Assembly: GCA_000320545.1 (NCBI GenBank) | Contig: ADNK01001387.1 | Span: 38,634 to 102,633 of the forward strand | Length of the DNA: 64,000 nt | Direction: 5' to 3' | DNA from: Bigelowiella natans CCMP2755 | Lineage: Eukaryota; Protista; Cercozoa | In this document: positions 25,326-38,100 of the stretch, one piece after another | How the letters are laid out: each line of letters opens with the position of its first letter | How positions within the stretch are numbered: the first letter of the stretch is position 1 | Notes under the pieces: generated by a model | What the model was told of the DNA's origin: nothing | Database searches by the model: none | Seen by the model: only the letters and a program-made list of their open reading frames with translations | Program-made: the position numbers and the translations under genes

Positions 25326-26054
25326 TCACATTCTTGAAAATCGCTCAAACTTCTTGACAGCTTCCCTGGAGCCAAAGTCCATCATGATCTCTTCTGACCC
25401 CCCTGGTATTGCGTATGCACGAACATCCCTGTACAAAGCCTCTACTTTAGCACCAACACCCCCGCGCGTATATGCAGCGCCGCCGAAGATCTGCGCTGCC
25501 TCACGTGCGCAGAATTCAAAGGTTTTGGACGCGTGAGTCTTGAGGAGAGCGATAGCACCCCCTAGCTTCATGTTGGACTCCTTCTTCTTCATCGTCGTTA
25601 GCTGATATCTGCAGTATGTATTATGCAGCATTCAATTTAATACCATAGCTTGTACCAGCAGCAGTACGTAATAATAGCTGTCAAGTAGGAAAGATGGTGA
25701 TTAGACTAGTACTCACGTAATGCTTTCAAGCCAACACTGAGCAGACTCAATCTTACGAATCATTTCTGCAAGCTTCATTCGAATACTCTGATGCTTAATC
25801 AAAGGTTTCCCTATGTAGTAAACACAATCGAAGAACAGTTATTAGAAGTGTAGAATTGGAACGAGGATATACTATTTAACAATTCAATGAAAATAAGAAA
25901 CAAAACCAATGCACATATCTATTACGTGATAGATACGAAATTTTGACACTTTTTGCGTATCTATATTACTAGAGTAAATTTTTTTTCACTATCCGGCAAG
26001 CAAAGCTTTATCATCAGCACTCCTTTATTTTACTAGTACAGTTATGAATTGTTT

Positions 26055-26088
<34 letters not shown>

Positions 26089-26095
26089 ACTACTA

Positions 26096-26129
<34 letters not shown>

Positions 26130-27353
26130 GCTGCTGCAACTTGTACTAGTAGTACCGAAAGTCTTGCGTTTAGATGCGTACTTGAATGCTTCCTCATAGC
26201 AAACACGTGCAAATCGTAGCGTTTGTACGATAAGTCCCCACCTCTCATGATTGAAATTATACATGACGTAGTTCCAGCCCTTGTTTTCCTAAAAATGGTA
26301 ACATCAATGGAATGAGAATAATGGGAACATTACAAATAGCAAGATCAATGCAATGAGAATAACAAGAAAAGTAAATGAAAGAACAGTAAGTGATAACCAG
26401 GACAAAACAAGTAATTGATGTGTTGCGTTTATGTTACGCTGCTTTTGATGTTGATGCTGCTGACAGCATTAAAAACAGTACAAGTACATCTGATATTCTT
26501 GCTGCTGCTCCTTTTATTACTACCTTGCCAATGAGGTTCTCAACCGGAACCTTGACGTCCTAGAGAATAATAATAATATTAATAATGAGGAGAAGAAATG
26601 GTAGTAATGATGATATATCACTAGGAAGCAGAAGGAAGACTACCCACAAATACACTACACGTACCACTTTGCAATGACTCATACCTGCTGGTGCTACTAG
26701 TACTAGTACTACTACTACTACCTCAAAATTGATGTATGTCGTACCAGAAGCCCACACACCCATGCACTTCATGTGCCTGGTTGAAACTCCTTCCATATCT
26801 CTCTCGATCAACAACAAAGAAATCCCTTTGCCACCAGGCCCACCTGTGCGTACCTACGATGAAAGTTATGATGACAAAAGAACCAGTAGGAAGACACTAA
26901 TTAAAGAGTTGATAATTCCTCTTGACTCCTCCTCCCCTCCTTTGTACTGATATGCTGATGTTTTCCTCCTACTGCACCCAATTATTACTATTTACTATAC
27001 TACTACTACTAGCAGTAGTAGCAGTTAGTAATAGTACTACCGCGACAGTGTAGTAGTCAGCCCAGATGCCATTCGTGATCCACTTCTTCGAGCCATTGAC
27101 AATATAGTACTTGCCGCATTTAGACTTTTTGGCTGTAGTTTGCAGCCCTGCTACATCGCTACCAGCCCATGGTTCCGTTATGCATAAGCATATGATCTAT
27201 AGAATGATGATGATGATAATAATGATGATGACGATGATACTACTACTTTAGTTGAGAGATTGTTTGTACATTGTTAACTTGTTATTTGTGTTCTCATATT
27301 CTTGGTAGATTTACTATGTTTATTAGAACTTTACTACTACTACAACAACAGCA

Positions 27354-27388
<35 letters not shown>

Positions 27389-28222
27389 GACTTACTAGCT
27401 ATGGATATAAAGACAACATCTTTCACACTTTTTTTTTTTCCCCTCCTTTTTCTTCTTCCGTTATCAATCTTTTCAACCGTTTACACCAGCATTATGTGTA
27501 ATTTTTGGATGTATTGCGTTTGCTTGTTCTTTGTAAAGCAGCTTCTTCTTCCTTCACATACATGGTCATCATAACATTTATCATAACTGCTAATACCTTT
27601 TTGCCGTTTAAGCAACCAGGGACAACGCGCCTTTTAAGTTCCTCTGAGCCGAAGTGAATCACCGGTGGCAGTCCGATGGTAATACCCCCCAAAAAGCCCC
27701 AAGTTACACCACCTGAACCTAAAAGAAGAGGGATAGAGGATGAGGGCGATGGTGATGATGATACAATGGATAGTTATCATATGTTTGATGTGTTGGTTCT
27801 TATTTTGTATGGTTTATTCATCCACCCAGTTATTACTCCTCGAAGAATAAACTATTATTATTATTATTACTATTATTATTACCGCAGCGGGACATCTCAT
27901 CGATGAAAATAAGCTCGTGAAAAGCGTCGAATCCAGGAGGACCCTGAGAATAGTAGTAGTAGTAGGAGGAGGAGGAGGAGGAGGAGGAGGAGGAGGAAGA
28001 AGAAGAGAACAGAGATTGGAGTAGAAAGAGAACGATAACGAGTCATTCGGAGAATTAGTAACAGTATGAACGAACAGTAATAATAGTAATGACACTAATA
28101 TTTCAATAGATATGATCCTTCTGTCCTCCTCTTCCTCTATTTTAGTCATCAAAGTTCCCTCTCAATTTAATGAGCGATCGCTACCACTTTATCACTACTG
28201 GCACCACCAGTACTGTCACAAT

Positions 28223-28254
<32 letters not shown>

Positions 28255-28410
28255 GTCTATTTATTATACTTGAACATCGACGAATTGTTTAGGCCAAGGA
28301 GCGCCAACGCATGCTGGCATGATGCTGTCTTTGTACATTTTGGTGAGAACCTATATGCAATATGTAGCATAAACGATGTTATGATAAGGATGATGACAAT
28401 GATGATGACA

Positions 28411-28443
<33 letters not shown>

Positions 28444-28593
28444 GGGAAGCAAGTACGTACGCAGTAGTAGTGGTAGTACTACCTCACGATAACCATTTTC
28501 CCCAGGACCGTAGTTTTCGTTCCATTTCTGCACGTTTGGGGTTACATGCTCGTCCATCCTATTTTGTTTGTTATTACTTTTTATATTACACTA

Positions 28594-28627
<34 letters not shown>

Positions 28628-28928
28628 CATTGTTTACTACTACCACTACTACTACTACTCAGGTAGCAGTAGCATATATAAAATGTGATGATAAACAGCA
28701 GCAGTAGAACAGCTGGGTGGTAACAATATTAATAGCTAAATAATCCAGAGGAAGAAGAAATGTAGTATAATCGATGAAAAGAGTACAACAGTCACTATCA
28801 ACTCCCTGCGTCTTTTCCCCATAGTAGTAGCAGTAGTAGTACAACAATAACAACAACAACAACAACACATTGGCTTTTATCGATCCAACACAATTATTAC
28901 TATTATTTATGTGTACAAAATGCTGCTT

Positions 28929-28959
<31 letters not shown>

Positions 28960-29307
28960 ATCACTATTATATGGTAAGTAATCACAACAACTACCAAGCC
29001 CTGCACTTCTTCCGCCACAGCACATGCGTCTCTTTATAGTAAGGACTGTTCAGCGTTTGGTACCAAGCTGGATCACCATAAGGCACTAACTGGCCAAAGG
29101 GATTTGTCCGTACAAGGACTGACATATCTGGCTTAGGTGCTGGGCCAAACATCGAGTTGAGAGTCATCGATATAGCCTTATCACGCTTATTCTCATACCT
29201 GATAAATGCATAATTATGATTATGATAATTTTGAGAATAAGGAGGAGGAGGAGGAGGAGGAGGAGGAGGAGGAGGAGGAAGGAGTTGAACAGCATTTTAG
29301 ACTTATC

Positions 29308-29338
<31 letters not shown>

Positions 29339-30417
29339 CGGCAGCAGCGGCATGTTTGTCAGCATCATGATCGATGTCTGCGATGAAATGGCGTCATTTC
29401 AACAAAAACGACCATGTGCAGGCTGCTGAAGATACTTTGACTTTAATATTATTATTATTATTATTTATTATTATTATCATCATTACTTTGCTTGGGCTTC
29501 CTTAGCATCGGGTGTTGCCGCACGCAGTGCACTCTTCGCAGCCTTGAAGAAAAGAAGAAACAGATTCTATTGTTTAAATCCGAGCGACAGATACATTTTA
29601 ATTAACCTCTCTCTGCTTTCGTCATCATTTAGTGTTACATTTCTTACCATTTTAGTACTAGTACTTCGTCATTATTCTCTCTCTTATTATTATTATTATT
29701 ATTATCATCATCATTATCATTATCTGAAGTGGTAGTAACCTTGGAATCTTGGATATAACCGACAAGCAGTCGAGGCTTGTACTTACGCATTACGTCTAAG
29801 CAATTGCAAGTAAGTAGTGGCGGTGAAATATGAATACTGTAGTAGTAGTAGTAGTCCGTTGATGTATCTTTTCAGTTAGTAAGTAAGCTCCGCAAAGCAG
29901 CAGCAACAACAACATTAAAAGCAATTTGGACTGTAAAAAGAAATAACATGTACACTACACAACCTGGGCCATGGAAAAGCCCGTACTTCTTTGTTACATC
30001 CTTCCCAGCCTAAAAATTAATAATAGAGACTTATTATTATTCACATTTAAGCTCACGTAGGTATGTGTGTGCATTGTCGTCGTCGTCGTCGTCGTCGTAT
30101 TATTATTATCATCATCACTACTACTAATACTACTACTACTGATAATAATAATCATAATAATGACAAGCAGCACCTCTTGAGCCAGGACCAAACGGCCACC
30201 TGGGTGAGCGTCAACAAAGTCACTGATGTCAAACACCTACAAATAATGGAGTATGATACTCAACAAATTAAGGAGGAGGAGGAGGAGGGGGAGGGGGGGG
30301 ACTAAATCTTTACATAGCTACTTTTTGAGTATTTGTAACCTGTCCGTCGATGATGACCCACATGTCACCCTCATTGCTGTGCTTTCCAACCTCCTCCCTA
30401 GTGAACGTCTGAGGCAT
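25326..30417 (-). CDS. Cytochrome b5 domain-acyl-CoA dehydrogenase fusion with C-terminal PTS1-like SRM
   Basis: [25 protein letters not shown]...DFVDAHPGG (b5 heme motif). ACAD motifs [66 protein letters not shown]. Ends KKFERFSRM*. Many microsatellite-filled introns. Confidence 0.92.
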
Positions 30418-30424
30418 GATGACG

Positions 30425-30456
<32 letters not shown>

Positions 30457-31626
30457 CATGGTCAACCTGTCGAATAATAATAAGTGTACGATATGGTGCA
30501 TCCATAGAACGCGTGCACTAGCATACCTTGATTTCCTCACTCATTTTTGCTAACTTCTGGTTCGTGTTATGGACACCTGAGCATTGAATTTACATAGGAG
30601 ATGGTTGACAGTGGTAGTATGCCATGCAGAAGGAAAAAGTTGCCTCGTCGATGACTTCATCGATCTATGTCTCTGCTCCTTTAGATCTATCATAGTACCT
30701 GGTCTAGTCGGCACTCTGCGTGTGTGTGTGTGTTTGTGTTGTGTGTGTGTGGGTGTGGGTGTGTGTGTATGCAATTGTGCTAATATTTTGTACGTGATTG
30801 ATGCATTTATCATCATATCGTTATTTTTCCAACAAATCCTATTCAAAATCCCCTCAAATTCTCATCAGTGTTTAGGATTTTCATACCAGGTGTCCAAATG
30901 AAACGTTAAATGTTATTTGTACGACATGCACAAAGTAGTATTTGCACAACAAAATCCCCTAGATTTCCTAGGATTTCCTGGATTTCTATGTCAATAGATC
31001 TATCTAGATCTACATCCGATGGACGTAGTCCGATTCGTAGCAAGTGCTTCAAAGAGGGGTACTCTCGTGCATGAATGATCTAGAATAGAAGATAAAGTCG
31101 AATAATAATAATGTGAACCCTGATGATAATAATAAGAAGGTTTTACACTGGTTCTGTGCAAGCCACACTTGTCTTAGATCTACATATAAAAGAAGAGTCC
31201 TATCATATTCTGTGTTTCAACAGGGGGGTACTCATAACATATTTGAATACATCTACTCCCGACAAGTAGACGTTTTTGACCCATTTGGGTCTATGTTGAT
31301 TCCCGCATGTCCAAAATATGTCCATTTTTCTGGCTACTTGCAAATGAAATAATACCGCATTCTGAATCATCTAGTTTTTGGCATGAGACAAATCCATTTA
31401 CAAGTCGCAATATCACCGTGAGAACAATGTTTAAAAATGGATCCCATTTTTGTGTATTCAAGACCTCCAACAAGGAATTCTTAGTAGATCTTCTCGTAGA
31501 TATATTACGCGTACGAACATGATGAAAAAGTTGTCGTCGTAGAACATAAATTCAGGGGGGTTTTCCTAAATACTCCCACAATTGTCCTGCACGAGACTAG
31601 TAGTCGAGAGGAGCCACACCACAAAA
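30418..31626. promoter_or_regulatory. Shared bidirectional promoter of ACAD and DegP with four TAGATCTA palindromes
   Basis: TAGATCTA at 30682, 30995, 31005 and 31175; near-match TAGATCTT at 31485. Regulatory function is inferred from position only. Confidence 0.45.
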
Positions 31627-33791
31627 ATGGCAGCTGAGTTGCATCGATCCTACAGGGAAGTGGTTCAGCCCTCCCTCCAGGCTGTCGTATCCATCTACAC
31701 CAGCGGAAAGGTCTCTCCCCAACCTGAATTTCCCCTCGAATCGACGATATCTGATCGCAGTGATCTGTGCCAAGCATTCGTAACAACCGCAATGATCTGT
31801 TTTAGTTGCATACCTGTAAGACTGTGGTAGCATCTGTAAATTTTGCTCATGTCTAATTTGTATGTCCAACGAATATATGTTATTTTTAATGGCTTCGTCG
31901 TCGTCGTCGTCGTCGTCGTCTTTTCACGTGTAGGTGTCCGAAGAGGCGAAGAAGAATTTCCAGTTTGGACCCTTCAAATTTTTCGAAATACCTGAGAATG
32001 ATGATGGGCCTCCCCCACAAAAACTACGGCAGGCATTGGGATCTGGCGTCATAGTCAGAAAGAATGGCCTGGTTGTTAATATCTAACAGCACGATTATTT
32101 TGCACCAAATCATAAACAGTACGAAGCATTTGAAGAAGAAGAAGAAGAAGCAGAAGAAGAGAGGCGATATGGCGAATCAAACGCTGCTTCGTCAGCAGAT
32201 TTAAGAAACGAGGAAATCCAATTTTGTATCATTTTGGGCTGCTCCACATTTCCTCTCTTTTACATCACTGCAGGTTATCACGAACAACCACGTTATCAAA
32301 GCTGCCGATGAGATCAAGGTTGTCCTCCTTAAAACAACAACAATATGCGACCAGCAAGCCGTAACGCTATAAAAGGCGACGACACTATGCTATAATGGTT
32401 CTTCTTCTTCTTCTTCTTCTGACCATAATCACTTATGATGTGTGACATAATGTGCAGGTAGTAATGGTGGATGGACGCACCTTCGATGCGAAAGTTATTG
32501 TCAAAGATGCAGATTGCGGTATGAAAGTCCTCGTGATTGCTGTTAAAATTCCATACCAAATAAACATCTGAACACCTGAATAGAGATAATCTAAAATGCA
32601 ACGACACACGCTACAACAAATAATTTTGATAAAGGAAGATAATGTTTGTTTCTACCTTCTCTACTCGTAATCATGTTACCAATTATTATGTAGATCTTGC
32701 GGCGCTGCGACTTGTGAAGGTTATTCTTCGCCATCCCAAGACAACATCCCTTGTCGTAGGATGGGGGGTTATTTCCTTTACAAAATAATCAGTACCATAT
32801 TTATGGAGACTATATCATCAGTTCCAAATATTTATAGACTGCAAAGAATGCATATCATCAGTAGTATCAAATATTATTTGTAGACTGCACAGAATGCTCA
32901 TTATTTTGAAGTTGACTTCCCGATGATTGAGTTGGGTCTTGGGCATGCTGTAGAGGTAGTAGTGTTACTGCTAGCAGTAGTAGTAGTAGTAGTGCGGCCA
33001 CCTTTACTTATTGGAACTATGAAGAGACAAATTCTTAAATCCATTGTTCTTTTCTCACTCCATCACATCACAGGTGGGAGACGTCTGCCTCGCCATTGGA
33101 AACAACTTAGGGTTACAAGGCACGGTGACTCAAGGTGCTACTATGAGTGCTGTAAAGCTCGTATGTTTGTACGTAGTAGCCTCCAACAAAGCAGCAGTAG
33201 CACTGGGCTGCATGGGTGGAGGGATGGTTTCTGCTAGTTTATAAATGAAAGAGGAGGAGGAGGAGGAGGAGGAGGAGGAGGAGTATAGTCGTCGTCTACA
33301 CCTTCCTCTTACTACTACTCCTATTCCACTACTATACACATCCCTCCTCCCTACCTACCTCTTTCGCCCATCAGGAATAATTCCACTACTATACACATCC
33401 CTCCCTACCTCCCTCTTCCCCCCATCAGGAATAATCTCAGCGGTAGGTCGTTTTATGGACAACAAACAGCCAGATAGTAGTAGAAGGACGGCGGCAAGAT
33501 CGAAACTACGGGTTCCATTGATACAGACCTCAGCTTCGATCAATCCTGGCAGCAGTGGGGGAGCTCTAGTGGATATGAACGGCCACCTAATCGGCATAAA
33601 TACTGCCATTGTATGTAGTAACAAAATGTGAAAGATGATTGTACCACTCCTCCCTTATCACTCATCCTCATATTACTGAAAAATAATCTTGCAGCACAAA
33701 ATGATGAGAAGATGCTCTTTCTTCCTCCTCCTCCTACCGCTATTACTGCTACTACAACTACCAATACTACAACTACCAATACCACTATACC

Positions 33792-33829
<38 letters not shown>

Positions 33830-34057
33830 AACTACTAGGTAACACCTTCTCGAGGCAATGTAGGGCTTGCCTTTGCCGTACCTGCCAATTACATTCTTCC
33901 AATTCTAGCAGCTGTAGATGCTAATGAGCCCTCGATTAAAAGGTAGGTATGGATGATATCATCATGTTTATGATCACATCACTGGCAGCAATAATATTTC
34001 CAATCAACAACAGCAGTATATTGCGTATGTGCTATCCTCTGTGCGTTTTATTATGTA

Positions 34058-34100
<43 letters not shown>

Positions 34101-34306
34101 TGTGTGTGTGCGCTACTGCTGCTGCTGTGCTGTGACATGACTGATATTTCTTCAGTGGTTGTTTTTCCTTCTTATTTTTGTTTTGTCAATTCTTCCCAGC
34201 TAATACTCCCTTGTTTCTCATTATGATTCAGATTCTTTCTTATTGTTCTTTTCAGGCCATTTATCGGTCTCACTCTTGGGCAGAATCCATGGCCTAAGAA
34301 AGTCTG

Positions 34307-34337
<31 letters not shown>

Positions 34338-34802
34338 AAAATAGATACATTATCGTCTGCTACTGCAAGTACTACTGTTACTATTTGTACTAGTATCACA
34401 ATTATTGGCATTTCAAAGTAATGCTGCACATATTCTCAAATATGATTAGTACCGGACACATGATCTCCTGGTCCTCCCATTCTCTCGACCTATCGAGAAA
34501 ATAGATGATAGTTTTTCTGCTGCTGCTTCTTCTTCCCTCATTATCATTATCATCACTCTATTGTTGTTGTTGTTGTTGTCTGCTGTCATAAGGGGATCTT
34601 AGTTCATGGTGTGATGAGAGATGGCCCTGCTGGAAGGGCAGGGGTATTTATTATATGTTTGACAATGTTAAGCAGCTGCTGCTAATGATGATGAGGAGGA
34701 GGAGGAGGAGGAGGAGGAGGAGGAAGAAGAAATGGAGAAGCAAGAGGGGAGGAAGGATGGATAAACGTCACATCTGGAATATATTTTCACATGATCTTAT
34801 AA

Positions 34803-34842
<40 letters not shown>

Positions 34843-35298
34843 CCATGTATACGTTACATACCAACCTCCTGTAATCAATCTTGTGGGGTTGTTTGGAAGG
34901 TATTGGCAAAGGACATCATTCTAAAGCTAAATAACACACCGACTCTCGATTCGGTGATGATGTTAAAAGCAGCAGCAGCAGTGACATAATAACTAGGAAC
35001 AGCAAGAGAAGGGAGGGGAGGGAACCGGTGGTCTTCCATGATGCTGCGAAATATGATGATGATGATGATGATGATTTCACACATAACAAAAGCAATAGCC
35101 CTTTTCTCTATGGATTGAGTAATATATTGATTACGAGAGTGCTACTTCCCTTCGCTAGTAGTGTATATGTAGCAGAACAAGTAGCATTTGTTATAAATAG
35201 CTTAGGAGCACATAATATTATTAATAATTGTGATCATCATCATCATCATCACTACTAATATACTGACTTGGTTGGCGAATGCTTGGTGGTTTCTCTCT

Positions 35299-35331
<33 letters not shown>

Positions 35332-35557
35332 CAAGGATCGATTCTTAATGATGATAGCCTTACAAAATATTGGATCAAGTGTGCAACTGAAGGTGATAGA
35401 AGTATGCTAGTAATGAGGATGGTGATGATGATGATGATGACAATGATGATGGTTTTATATGAGAAGGTAAATATTGTATCAACATGCATTTGAACGAGTG
35501 ATCATTCTTATAGAGCTTGGTGCGATATATGCTACTGTGACACGCTCTCTCTCTCTA

Positions 35558-35624
<67 letters not shown>

Positions 35625-37069
35625 TACACACAGCAGCAGCAGCAGCTATAAGGATATCTTCCCATCATTTATATCAATATACTCCCAATATATGATGATG
35701 ATGATTGAGGTTGACCGGAATGGACAAGAAAAGATGATTAGTATCACAATCGGCGTCTGGAAGCCAGCAAAGGACAAATTGCTGGTAATTAACTAACTAG
35801 AATGAGTATGAAGAAGATAAGACAAACGAATTAAGGAAGTAATGAAGACGACAAGCAGCACCAAGATAATGACATAAATGACAATATACCTTAGTCGAAA
35901 TGAGGAGAAGATAGATATCAAGTAGTATTGAGATGCAGATCATCCTGGTGTCCAATGATGATGATGATAAAGAGAAGCACACTACTACTACTACTACTAC
36001 TACTACTACCCATGCTGCTTGTCTATCTTCTACAGGTAGTCAAAGACGAAACAAATCCGCTGGATGGAACCACTCTAGCAGAGGTGCAAGAAGAACATGA
36101 GAGAGGGGGGGAATTCACCATTATTTGTGTATGATTTTATTGCCTAATGTTGTTTGGTAGATGAACCCTGGTTTGAACGGTGAGTTGGGACTAGATCCAC
36201 AGCTGCAAGGTGTCGTGGTACTCAAGGTCTGTCTGTCATCAACAAACAAAATCAACCAATAATATATAAGTAAATAGGGGGAGGAAGATGCAGAAGAGTG
36301 GAGAGTGAATACTACTACTTCTATGCTACTACTACTACTAACAACAACAACAACAGTAATAATAACAACAACAACAGTAATAATAATAGTCACAATAATA
36401 ACAATAATAATGTCCATCATCGTCATCGTCATCATTATCATCATCATCATCATCATCATCATGCATAAACCACTAATGGACCACTACTACTACCACTATA
36501 AGGTTGCTGGTGGTTCGAGTGCCGCTGGCCTATTCCAGACAGGCGACCGAATCCTAAAGATAGGGACGAGTACGGTATACATTATGATGATCATGATGAT
36601 GATGATCCTGCCGTCTTATCCTATGATGATCAGAGTAACTTCTGCTATTATTTCGGATCTAAATAATGTGTATTGCTACGGATTTTATAAATTGTGTTAC
36701 AATTGTTATCTTTATGGTGATAAATAGATTAAAACACTCGAGGATCTCACCCGTGCAGTCGAGAAGAATATTGGTAAATTATCTGCAGCAACGACGCTGA
36801 AAATTAGGTGATTATATCATCGTTCTCGTGAGCAGTATCATCAATGTTTGTCGGACGACGAATAGTCGTTCGGTCCCCACCTATTTGGTAATGCTGCATG
36901 CGTATAATAACCATCTCTGAAATCAGTTGCTGAAAGAATATTTATCTGCTGCTGCTGCTGCTGCTTCTGCTTCTTCTTCGTCTTATTCACCGTCTTACGT
37001 AGGGTTGCTCGCGGGAGTGTTGTGATCGAGTTCCGCCTTAGCCTCAGGCCGTTGAAGTCAAAACTGTAG
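31627..37069 (+). CDS. DegP/DegQ-type HtrA serine protease (protease + 2 PDZ), no N-terminal signal, C-terminal SKL
   Basis: First ATG after an in-frame stop: [23 protein letters not shown]. Then [14 protein letters not shown] (His), DADC|DLAALRL (Asp), [21 protein letters not shown]|[38 protein letters not shown] (Ser). PDZ1 RPFIGL...DGPAGRAG...DIILKLN; PDZ2 [14 protein letters not shown]|[21 protein letters not shown]. Last exon 37003-37069 reads R|[21 protein letters not shown]. Confidence 0.9.
33323..33433 (+). repeat. Tandem duplication (~55 bp) spanning a 3' splice site in the DegP gene
   Basis: attccactactatacacatccctc...cccatcag|GAATA occurs twice; acceptors open at 33375 and 33429, 54 nt apart. 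Confidence 0.9.
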
Positions 37070-37099
37070 AGGCATAGGGGGGGGGCTCTATCTATCATT

Positions 37100-38100
37100 C
37101 GTCATCATAGAACAAGGCTTGGACAATAAGCGATTACACACTGCTGTGTACAACCACTGGTCCTCGTTGCATGGATTATGCAATAAGTAGTCCATTCAAA
37201 AGAAATCACCTTGCGGTGGATCACCGAATCTTGCACTGGGGTATATGTGGAATTTAGGCAAGGTTGTTACACGATGGTGATGTATAGATGATAGTGATGA
37301 TGATGATGATGATGATGAAATGCAGCAAGCTAGCAAGCAGCATGGCACGCCAGATTATTGTGACAATTAATGATGCGCTTTGACGTACAATGACCGACCA
37401 GGGAGAGGGCGACGCGCCGCCAGGATGCGACGTACGCGACGTACATGCGTGCGCACGTGCATGCAGGGCCTTTATAAGGGGCGGTACAGCGACTGCCTGC
37501 AACATGATCGATGGTGCATGTATATACACATAAGCGCTGTACGTAGCCTCTGCCTTGCATGTACACGTACAGCTTTAACATAGGATGACCAATGCTATAT
37601 GAAAAGATTTAATCACTCATTGTATATCTCTGTCTCATAGATGCATGTTGCTTCTTGCATGCGCGGGCTAGCGCGCGCGAGCGGGGGCGTTTTGTTCGAA
37701 GCAGCGCACATGTACGGTTGGCGGTTACGTTACATGCATATTGTGATTGCACGTACAGCCTAACTAGCTAGCTAGCACACATTAACACATGTAGACACAT
37801 TGAATGATCGAAGCAACATCCGCTCGCGGCAGCTGTTGATTAATGTTCCTATGACAGACACTCTATCTACGCAAAACTAGAAAAGCGTACACACACACAC
37901 ACACACACACACATACGCACTATCACATGTGGATCCCATTGTATGTACAGATGCATCTGGATTATTTGCATGGTACATGCATGCAACAAGTAGTTTGAAG
38001 CTCAAGACTCGTGAACTTTTTCGCCGTGCATGTAGTTTGAAGCTCAAGACTCGTGAACTTTTTCGCCTCCAAACAAGTGCGTTAATTTTATTTGTTTTTC
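37100..38100. other. TG/CA/CG-rich tract downstream of DegP
   Basis: Contains gtacgcgacgtacatgcgtgcgcacgtgcatgca, ctagctagctagc and similar words. Confidence 0.65.
37990..38067 (+). repeat. Perfect 36-bp direct repeat x2 separated by 6 bp
   Basis: gtagtttgaagctcaagactcgtgaactttttcgcc at 37990-38025 and 38032-38067. Confidence 0.95.

What the first reader, a model, noticed from the sequence alone, without database searches (positions are those of the whole stretch)
31627..37069. Bacterial-type DegP/DegQ protease apparently retargeted to the peroxisome
It has a full protease-PDZ-PDZ layout with His/Asp/Ser intact (GSSGG for the usual GNSGG). Segments recall alphaproteobacterial DegP/Q ([17 protein letters not shown]; [21 protein letters not shown]). 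It starts directly at the mature-domain helix with no signal or transit peptide and ends LKSKL*, a canonical PTS1. The peroxisomal Deg proteases I know (plant DEG15, mammalian TYSND1) lack PDZ domains. This would be an independent recruitment of a chaperone-protease to peroxisomal quality control. The SKL exon is absent from the ORF track.
Basis: partly seen in the sequence, partly recalled or inferred. Interest (0 to 1): 0.74.

Follow-up and report, generated by a model that had tools for sequence, protein, structure and literature searches.

The report
Bacterial-type HtrA protease with peroxisome tag
The alga Bigelowiella natans expresses a 19-exon gene for a bacterial DegP/DegQ-type protease-chaperone that has no entry signal at its start and ends in the peroxisome import tag SKL; the tag is kept in every related lineage found, so a protease type not known from peroxisomes probably works there.

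Summary
Window 31627-37069 (+) holds a 19-exon, 462-aa gene in which every intron is GT..AG. Spliced transcript contigs from three studies and an MMETSP transcript ORF support both ends. Transcripts start 18-35 nt before Met1, and the last exon ends ...RPLKSKL*. The layout is protease (His80/Asp110/Ser205, GSSGG) plus two PDZ domains.

The JGI model Bigna1 135758 already exists. It has the same ends and one unsupported 16-aa insertion.

- Sixteen relatives were found in chlorarachniophytes, a eukaryotic MAG and marine (meta)transcriptomes. They form one clade (100/100).
- All complete ones lack a presequence. 13 of 16 end in S[KR]L, 2 end in SNL, and 1 has an aberrant end.
- None of 216 bacterial homologues ends in a PTS1-like tripeptide.
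- The clade groups with alphaproteobacterial DegQ (100/98).
- 17 of 18 intron positions are shared with Amorphochlora, so the gene is an old nuclear resident.

Peroxisomal localisation, PEX5 in this species and the protease's substrates were not tested. No paper describing such a protein was found.

The scan noted this same stretch once more (s1-417758), not on other DNA.

The parts
31592..31626 (+). 5' UTR as seen in transcript contigs. The starts are at 31592 (X7) and 31609 (X1, X2). An in-frame TAA lies at 31567-31569, just upstream.
31627..31710 (+). Exon 1 (aa 1-28). Met1, then the first helix and strand of the mature HtrA fold. No signal or transit peptide.
31934..32071 (+). Exon 2 (aa 29-74). 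LA-loop region and GSGVIV strand.
32274..32318 (+). Exon 3 (aa 75-89). TNNHV, with catalytic His80 (codon 32289-32291).
32458..32518 (+). Exon 4 (aa 90-109, plus the first base of the Asp110 codon).
32694..32719 (+). Exon 5. Completes catalytic Asp110 (32518 + 32694-32695); DLAALRLVK. The JGI model runs on past 32719 for 16 extra codons, which RNA contigs and orthologues do not support.
32884..32955 (+). Exon 6 (aa 119-142).
33074..33134 (+). Exon 7 (aa 143-162). [20 protein letters not shown].
33429..33610 (+). Exon 8 (aa 163-223). L3-type loop with a lineage-specific insert. [10 protein letters not shown] holds catalytic Ser205 (codon 33554-33556).
33839..33942 (+). Exon 9 (aa 224-257). End of the protease domain.
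34256..34301 (+). Exon 10 (aa 258-273). Start of PDZ1; RPFIGL is the carboxylate-binding loop.
34593..34643 (+). Exon 11 (aa 274-290). PDZ1.
34900..34953 (+). Exon 12 (aa 291-308). PDZ1.
35336..35392 (+). Exon 13 (aa 309-327). PDZ1.
35710..35784 (+). Exon 14 (aa 328-352). End of PDZ1 and linker.
36036..36083 (+). Exon 15 (aa 353-368). Start of PDZ2.
36161..36226 (+). Exon 16 (aa 369-390). PDZ2.
36503..36574 (+). Exon 17 (aa 391-414). PDZ2.
36728..36807 (+). Exon 18 (aa 415-440, plus 2 bases). PDZ2.
37003..37069 (+). Exon 19. Last PDZ2 strands, basic tail RPLK, PTS1 tripeptide SKL (37058-37066) and TAG stop (37067-37069).
37070..37320 (+). 3' UTR, unspliced. Contigs cover up to 37149 and run on for about 170 nt more.
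   Evidence: record 13: 1117 of 1288 letters at 37149

Best explanation
This is a nuclear, intron-rich, expressed gene of Bigelowiella natans for a 462-aa DegP/DegQ-type HtrA protease-chaperone: an S1C protease domain followed by PDZ1 and PDZ2.

Proposed path. The protein is made in the cytosol without any N-terminal targeting peptide. Its flexible, basic C-terminal tail ends in SKL, which the PTS1 receptor PEX5 would bind. PEX5 would then carry the folded protein, possibly already oligomeric, into the peroxisomal matrix.

Proposed role. In the matrix it most likely acts as its bacterial relatives do. It would be ATP-independent, built from trimers that can close into PDZ-mediated cages. It would bind unfolded or damaged matrix proteins through PDZ1 and the sensor loops, then either hold or cleave them. 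That amounts to protein quality control, and possibly processing of imported enzymes.

Shown here: gene structure, expression, both ends of the coding sequence, domain layout, an intact catalytic triad, DegP/DegQ-like fold of the orthologue, conservation of the PTS1 and of the missing presequence across a monophyletic eukaryotic clade, and affinity to alphaproteobacterial DegQ.

Inferred: import by PEX5, peroxisomal location, oligomeric state, proteolytic activity and substrates.
For: - Gene model and RNA support.
- Protease plus two PDZ domains above Pfam thresholds.
- End-to-end match to the Do family model TIGR02037.
- Nearest solved relatives are bacterial DegP/DegQ by sequence (234-266 bits, against Deg1 182 and HTRA2 162) and by fold (E 1e-35 to 1e-30 over about 450 columns).
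- The AF2 model of the Amorphochlora orthologue has pLDDT 90.2 and pTM 0.84. The last residues, about 444-451, have pLDDT about 37, so the tail is free.
- Clade of 16 relatives: 13 end in S[KR]L, 2 in SNL, 1 has an aberrant end. The tails are otherwise unalignable but basic. All members have GSSGG, and none of the full-length ones has a presequence. Among 216 bacterial homologues, none has a PTS1-like end and 212 have GNSGG.
- A profile search shows a score gap: the clade scores 463-746 bits and bacteria score 360 or less.
- Clade monophyly is 100/100. Clade plus alphaproteobacterial DegQ against the rest is 100/98.
- 17 of 18 intron positions are shared with Amorphochlora. A homologue lies among ordinary eukaryotic genes in a MAG.
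- The neighbouring divergent gene, cytochrome b5-acyl-CoA dehydrogenase, ends in SRM.
- Other Rhizaria (foraminifera) express Pex5, Pex7 and Pex19 (bioRxiv 10.1101/2022.07.20.500910).
Against: - No localisation data exist.
- I could not test whether B. natans has PEX5 or other peroxins, because no tool route was left.
- The TIGR02037 score (288 bits for B. natans, 262-315 for relatives) is below the curated cut-off of 416, so this is a divergent member.
- The Asn-to-Ser change next to the catalytic Ser has unknown effect.
- SKL also fits the class I PDZ-ligand pattern S/T-x-hydrophobic, so a non-targeting role of the tail is conceivable.
- Two relatives end in SNL, a weaker signal.
- The head-to-head pairing with the SRM-ending ACAD is not conserved in Amorphochlora.
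- The tree holds no other eukaryotic HtrAs, and its bacterial rows were picked by two peptide patterns.
Confidence: 0.7

Rival explanations
1. The protein is a cytosolic (or nucleo-cytosolic) HtrA. Its conserved C-terminal S-[KR]-L is not an import signal. Instead it is a ligand for the protein's own or a neighbouring subunit's PDZ domain, giving autoinhibition or oligomer control.
For: - There is no N-terminal signal.
- SKL matches the class I PDZ-binding pattern (general knowledge).
- HtrA PDZ domains are allosteric switches that read C-termini, as in DegS and DegP (titles of entries).
Against: - The conserved pattern is Ser, then Lys or Arg, then Leu, with basic residues upstream. That is the PTS1 consensus; a PDZ ligand would leave the middle position free.
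- The tail is not docked and has low confidence in the AF2 model.
- In a cell with PEX5, a free C-terminal SKL is imported whatever its other roles.
- None of 216 bacterial homologues uses such a tail.
Confidence: 0.15
2. The protein is targeted to mitochondria or the plastid complex by an internal or cryptic signal, or is dual-targeted. The PTS1 would then be minor or masked.
For: - It shows alphaproteobacterial affinity, as many mitochondrial proteins do.
- Most eukaryotic HtrAs are organellar (PMC3473262).
Against: - Only about 8 residues precede the first conserved helix, and they belong to the fold in the model.
- Transcripts start 18-35 nt before Met1, with an in-frame stop upstream.
- B. 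natans plastid proteins need a signal peptide plus a transit peptide (PMC3542566).
- No orthologue has an extension, apart from a UniRef version of the Amorphochlora protein that reads 18 extra codons upstream of the NCBI start.
Confidence: 0.07
3. The SKL end is a chance or lineage-specific feature, or an annotation artefact, of an ordinary horizontally acquired bacterial gene or contaminant.
For: - The closest non-clade relatives are bacterial.
Against: - The gene has 18 spliceosomal introns, 17 of them shared with Amorphochlora.
- Spliced transcripts occur in several studies.
- Its neighbours are eukaryotic.
- The PTS1 is conserved across a clade with long internal branches.
Confidence: 0.02

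Closest known systems
Bacterial periplasmic DegQ/DegP (Do family, TIGR02037; MEROPS S1C), especially alphaproteobacterial DegQ (Bradyrhizobium, Pseudolabrys, Microvirga, Mesorhizobium)
   Same: - Same length class.
- Same protease-PDZ1-PDZ2 order.
- Intact His/Asp/Ser triad.
- End-to-end profile match.
- Best sequence and fold matches.
- Groups with the alphaproteobacterial set in the tree.
   Different: - No signal peptide.
- Eukaryotic nuclear gene with 18 introns.
- C-terminal basic tail with PTS1.
- GSSGG instead of GNSGG.
- Only 35-40% identity.
- Scores below the family's curated cut-off.
Plant DEG15 (glyoxysomal processing protease) and mammalian TYSND1
   Same: - Trypsin-fold Deg/HtrA-superfamily serine proteases.
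- They carry a PTS1 (DEG15: SKL) and act in the peroxisomal matrix (PMC3473262, PMC7710942).
   Different: - DEG15 and TYSND1 have no PDZ domain.
[quoted passage not shown]
- They form a separate clade (clade IV).
- The B. natans protein is a 462-aa two-PDZ DegQ type, so the PTS1 was acquired independently.
- I did not compare the sequences directly, because no DEG15 sequence was available through the tools.
Other eukaryotic HtrAs (plant Deg1/5/8, Deg2/7/9, human HTRA1-4)
   Same: - HtrA protease domain followed by PDZ domain(s).
   Different: - They are targeted by N-terminal signals to plastid, mitochondrion, nucleus or the secretory path.
- HTRA1-4 and Deg1 carry one PDZ, and Deg2/7/9 have a divergent PDZ pair.
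- They score lower than bacterial DegP/DegQ against the clade profile (Deg1 182 bits, HTRA2 162 bits, against 234-266).

Membership tests
HtrA / Do family serine endopeptidase (TIGR02037, MEROPS S1C) | Chymotrypsin-fold protease domain with a His-Asp-Ser triad | tested here: met
   Trypsin_2 scores 85.8 bits on P0458. His80, Asp110 and Ser205 sit in columns that are invariant across 48 aligned homologues.
HtrA / Do family serine endopeptidase (TIGR02037, MEROPS S1C) | Two C-terminal PDZ domains | tested here: met
   PDZ_2 scores 43.5 bits (PDZ1) and 34.8 bits (PDZ2) against a cut-off of 27, on the two halves of the B. natans C-terminal region.
HtrA / Do family serine endopeptidase (TIGR02037, MEROPS S1C) | Whole-protein score at or above NCBIfam's curated cut-off (416.2 bits) | tested here: not met
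   B. natans P0458 scores 288.4 bits and relatives score 262-315 bits. The alignment is end to end (model positions 2-430 of 434 for P0021), so this is a divergent relative rather than a different architecture.
HtrA / Do family serine endopeptidase (TIGR02037, MEROPS S1C) | N-terminal signal peptide and a periplasmic location | tested here: not met
   The protein starts about 8 residues before the first conserved helix, whereas bacterial homologues carry hydrophobic leaders of about 25-35 aa.
HtrA / Do family serine endopeptidase (TIGR02037, MEROPS S1C) | DegP/DegQ-like three-domain fold | tested here: met
   Tested on the Amorphochlora orthologue (59% identical), not on the B. natans protein. 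AF2 gives pLDDT 90.2. The top Foldseek hits are DegP 24-mer and 12-mer and Legionella DegQ, over about 446-459 columns.
PTS1-targeted peroxisomal matrix protein | C-terminal tripeptide matching [SAC][KRH][LM] at the true end of the mRNA's ORF | tested here: met
   SKL is followed by TAG. The terminal exon is joined in contigs of three runs and is present in P0155 and P0458.
PTS1-targeted peroxisomal matrix protein | Signal conserved in orthologues, with supportive basic upstream residues and an exposed tail | tested here: met
   13 of 16 relatives end in S[KR]L and 2 end in SNL. In most relatives Arg or Lys directly precedes the tripeptide. The tail has pLDDT about 37.
PTS1-targeted peroxisomal matrix protein | PEX5 and a peroxisomal import machinery present in the organism | not tested
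No tool route to the B. natans proteome was left.
PTS1-targeted peroxisomal matrix protein | Experimental localisation in peroxisomes | not testable with these tools
   This needs a GFP fusion or cell fractionation.
DEG15 / TYSND1 peroxisomal processing proteases | No PDZ domain; protease domain in the C-terminal part of a longer protein (DEG15 is 709 aa); clade IV of Deg proteases | tested here: not met
   The definition comes from PMC3473262. The B. natans protein has an N-terminal protease domain, two PDZ domains and 462 aa.
DEG15 / TYSND1 peroxisomal processing proteases | Cleaves PTS2 presequences or processes beta-oxidation enzymes | not testable with these tools
   This needs a biochemical assay.

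The most novel reading that the evidence does not exclude
In this peroxisomal HtrA the PDZ domains may read the PTS1 tails themselves. Nearly every matrix protein ends in an S-K-L-like tripeptide, which also fits the class I PDZ-ligand pattern. A DegP/DegS-style protease that is switched on by C-termini could therefore use the import tag as a general degron or activator for matrix proteins whose tail becomes exposed on unfolding. Its own SKL tail could serve as a built-in inhibitor. A second part of this reading is that the gene descends from the mitochondrial ancestor's DegQ, was re-addressed to peroxisomes early in eukaryote history, and was then lost from most lineages.
Probability: 0.12. 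Interest if true: 0.85.

Novelty: new variant of a known kind. Interest (0 to 1): 0.6.

Why it matters
Known peroxisomal matrix proteases are Lon and the PDZ-less DEG15/TYSND1 processing enzyme. A DegP/DegQ-type cage-forming protease-chaperone with two PDZ domains has not been described in peroxisomes in any paper I could find.

If the localisation holds, three things follow:
- Peroxisomal proteostasis was solved differently in Rhizaria and some uncultured marine eukaryotes.
- It would be a second, independent case of an HtrA-superfamily protease gaining a PTS1.
- It would add a clear example of a protein of alphaproteobacterial affinity addressed to peroxisomes.

It also gives a testable system. 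Amorphochlora is transformable, to my knowledge. It could be used to ask how a large oligomeric protease is imported folded, and what PDZ domains recognise in a compartment where most proteins share one C-terminal motif.

Tried and rejected
- Pfam on single exons found only the Ser exon, because the other pieces are too short.
- The exhaustive representative search with the 60-aa exon did not return the B. natans protein itself. It did give three full-length relatives, which opened the rest of the work.
- The raw RNA-seq run X21 covered only the 3' end, with 39 reads, so it adds little. The contig joints at 32993-34561 are artefacts of GTT/CAA microsatellites, not splicing.
- Atlas look-ups of P0048 and P0065 gave only bacterial HtrA clusters and no clue to their organisms.
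- The 5' UTRs of L001-L004 show no dinoflagellate spliced leader, and the organisms stay unknown.
- I looked for a PTS2-like motif in the first 40 residues and found none by eye.
- I checked whether the head-to-head ACAD neighbour is conserved in Amorphochlora. It is not.
- Nine literature searches found no report of a PTS1-bearing two-PDZ HtrA or of chlorarachniophyte peroxisomes. Two PEX/peroxisome surveys I opened (PMC8172628, PMC4690255) do not mention B. natans or other rhizarian species.
- I could not hand the exact 462-aa spliced protein to the search and fold tools, because it has no reference. I used P0458 (the JGI model with the 16-aa insert), P0155 (the C-terminal 331 aa) and the orthologue P0021 as stand-ins.


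Full report
**What is there.** The window is eukaryotic: about 40% G+C, rich in microsatellites, with short exons. I confirmed this. The protein encoded here is identical, apart from one insertion, to EukProt EP00466_Bigelowiella_natans_P017993, which is JGI Bigna1 135758.

I read the sequence and chained GT..AG sites. This gave 19 exons on the + strand, from the ATG at 31627 to the TAG at 37067-37069. Together they are 1389 nt, or 462 codons. One of them spans a splice junction.

**RNA evidence.** Twenty public runs from seven studies hold 17-39% of the sampled words of the 6-kb stretch, which is what an exon-only copy would give. I laid contigs of three such runs from three studies, X1, X2 and X7. 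They carry the predicted GT..AG joints:
- 32071|32274
- 32318|32458
- 32518|32694
- 32719|32884
- 32955|33074
- 33134|33429
- 33942|34256
- 34643|34900
- 35784|36036
- 36083|36161
- 36226|36503

The listed pieces also give 31710|31934, 33610|33839 and 36807|37003.

One joint was reported as 34954->35708 with 'between: not known'. Arithmetic on record 13 of X7 explains it. Letters 422-890 of that record (469 nt) equal the sum of exons 10-17 only if the 57-nt exon 13 (35336-35392) is included.

There is independent support. The MMETSP transcript ORF P0155 (331 aa) is identical to residues 132-462 of my model.

The JGI model differs only by 16 extra residues after LRLVK, from a downstream donor. 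The contig joint 32719|32884 and every orthologue lack them.

Contig 1 of X1 retains introns 4 and 5. Some MMETSP ORFs (P0459, P0461) end inside retained introns. These are partly spliced RNAs.

**The two ends.** Three assemblies start at 31592-31609, which is 18-35 nt before Met1. An in-frame TAA lies at 31567-31569. No joint into exon 1 was reported.

Only about 8 residues precede the stretch that aligns with position 2 of the Do-family model in the orthologue. In the AF2 model that stretch is the first helix. Bacterial homologues have hydrophobic leaders in its place.

At the other end, the terminal exon is joined in all three runs and reads ...[15 protein letters not shown]. The contigs then continue unspliced for about 250 nt.

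**What kind of protein.** On the B. natans protein, Pfam finds Trypsin_2 (85.8 bits) and two PDZ_2 domains (43.5 and 34.8 bits; cut-off 27). The triad is His80, Asp110 and Ser205. These sit in columns that are invariant across 48 homologues.

The best NCBIfam model is TIGR02037, the Do family. It is matched end to end but below its curated cut-off, at 288 bits against 416.

Against solved structures, the clade profile scores best on bacterial proteins:
- H. pylori HtrA, E. coli DegP and DegQ, and other bacterial HtrAs: 234-266 bits
- plant Deg1: 182 bits
- human HTRA2: 162 bits

The Amorphochlora orthologue is 59% identical. Its AF2 model has pLDDT 90.2 and pTM 0.84. Its best Foldseek matches are DegP 24-mer and 12-mer and Legionella DegQ, over the full length. 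The last residues, about 444-451, have pLDDT about 37, so the tail that carries the tripeptide is free.

**Relatives.** A 60-aa exon searched against 1.84 billion representatives gave three full-length relatives without presequences that end in SRL, SKL and SKL. Word and profile searches enlarged this to 16 proteins:
- B. natans
- Amorphochlora amoebiformis (SRL)
- Lotharella oceanica (SKL)
- an MMETSP chlorarachniophyte (SKL)
- P0153 (SRL) and P0154 (SKL)
- P0065, from transcript-like Logan contigs (SKL)
- nine proteins of about 430 aa from marine (meta)transcriptome contigs: six SKL, two SNL, and one with an aberrant, probably frameshifted, end

P0153 is intronless on a eukaryotic MAG contig, among Vps4, RPL7, DOT1 and prefoldin genes.

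All 16 have GSSGG. All complete members start 5-12 residues before the first conserved helix. A UniRef version of the Amorphochlora protein reads 18 extra codons upstream.

The tails between the last PDZ2 strand and the tripeptide differ in length and sequence, but all are basic. Examples are SLRPLK, SVGGGPR, RLRR, VPDKNSTISNAR, KKARSPKRK and TKNTRGKIR. Conservation is therefore on the tripeptide itself, over branches that sum to more than two changes per site. This is the pattern expected of a targeting signal under selection, not of chance.

**Origin.** In the profile search the clade scores 463-746 bits. After a gap, the best bacterial DegQ scores 360 or less. Named top hits, and the best of 599 genome loci, are mostly Hyphomicrobiales such as Bradyrhizobium, Pseudolabrys, Microvirga and Mesorhizobium, at 35-40% identity.

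I built a careful ML tree with 56 rows under LG+C20+F+G4 PMSF. It gives:
- the PTS1 clade: 100/100
- the split {clade + alphaproteobacterial DegQ group} against all other sampled bacteria: 100/98. The other bacteria are Myxococcota, Acidobacteriota, Nitrospirota, Verrucomicrobiota, Campylobacterota and beta/gamma AlgW-type.
- the alphaproteobacterial group without the clade: 94/94

If the root lies among the other bacteria, the eukaryotic clade is sister to the sampled alphaproteobacterial DegQ rather than nested in one order. That fits either descent from the mitochondrial ancestor or an old transfer, and I cannot tell which.

There are caveats. No other eukaryotic HtrA was in the tree. The bacterial rows were selected by two peptide patterns. 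Several clade rows have deviant composition.

The gene is not a recent arrival. 17 of the 18 B. natans intron positions coincide, within one residue, with introns of the Amorphochlora gene, which has about 24 exons over 17.2 kb.

**How it probably works.** The protein is synthesised in the cytosol. PEX5 binds the free basic tail ending in SKL and imports the folded protein into the peroxisomal matrix. There it acts as an ATP-independent DegQ-like protease-chaperone on damaged or unfolded matrix proteins, and perhaps in processing. I put this at about 0.7. Gene, ends, domains and conservation are shown. Import, location, oligomer state, activity and substrates are inferred.

There is some context. 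The divergently transcribed neighbour is a cytochrome b5-acyl-CoA dehydrogenase whose first exon lies near 30420 on the minus strand. It ends in ...FERFSRM*, another PTS1-type end. This pairing is not kept in Amorphochlora.

I could not test whether B. natans has PEX5. Foraminifera, also Rhizaria, express Pex5/7/19.

**Rivals.**
- A cytosolic HtrA whose SKL is a PDZ ligand: 0.15.
- Another organelle, or dual targeting: 0.07.
- Chance or contamination: 0.02, already excluded by introns, transcripts and conservation.

**Comparison with what is known.** The protein works like, and is a divergent relative of, bacterial DegQ/DegP. It fails two family criteria: the curated score and the signal peptide.

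It is not a DEG15/TYSND1 orthologue. Those proteins lack PDZ domains, have the protease domain towards the C-terminus, and form their own clade (PMC3473262). DEG15 also ends in SKL (PMC7710942). The PTS1 was therefore gained twice within the HtrA superfamily.

Nine full-text searches found no description of a PTS1-bearing two-PDZ HtrA or of chlorarachniophyte peroxisomes. The gene model itself already sits, unnamed, in JGI, EukProt and UniRef.

**Verdict.** I class it as a new variant of a known kind, with interest 0.6.

Noticed in passing
window 25329-30424 (- strand): The divergent neighbour is a multi-exon cytochrome b5 + acyl-CoA dehydrogenase gene. Its last exon ends ...[13 protein letters not shown], a PTS1-type end. 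Its start lies about 1.2 kb from the HtrA start, so a shared promoter region is possible. The pairing is not conserved in Amorphochlora, where the neighbours are DUF6939 and UTP6 genes.
   Followed up: partly
window 32720-32767: The JGI gene model Bigna1 135758 reads 16 extra codons ([16 protein letters not shown]) past the exon 5 donor. Transcript contigs and all orthologues use the donor at 32720, so the public model is probably wrong there.
   Followed up: yes
window 32456-32953; 35785-35800; 36227-36259: Partly spliced RNAs exist. One X1 contig retains introns 4 and 5. MMETSP ORFs P0459 and P0461 end in retained introns 14 and 16 (...KDKLLVIN*, ...[14 protein letters not shown]).
   Followed up: partly
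window 32976-32997 and 34517-34580: Tri-nucleotide microsatellites in introns (GTT/AAC-type and GCT-type runs) attract chimeric contig joints and many loose ends in the transcriptome assemblies. These are not splice events. Introns here are packed with (CA)n, (TC)n and codon-like repeats.
   Followed up: partly
L005:8001-9437 (GCA_977009605.1), also L006 and L007: An intronless 478-aa member of the PTS1-HtrA clade (-SRL) lies in a compact, gene-dense eukaryotic metagenome-assembled genome, next to DOT1, RPL7, Vps4 and prefoldin genes. In the tree it is sister to the chlorarachniophytes. The organism is unknown.
   Followed up: partly
L004 and proteins P0048, P0271-P0277, P0206: A tight group of about 430-aa PTS1-HtrAs occurs in marine (meta)transcriptome contigs (JGI and Logan). 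None carries an MMETSP or EukProt source tag. Two members end in SNL instead of SKL, and one has a probably frameshifted end. The source organisms are unknown.
   Followed up: partly
window 31519-31542: A short upstream ORF (ATGATGAAAAAGTTGTCGTCGTAG) lies about 85 nt before Met1. It is outside the 5' ends of the three transcript contigs, so it is probably not in the mRNA.
   Followed up: no
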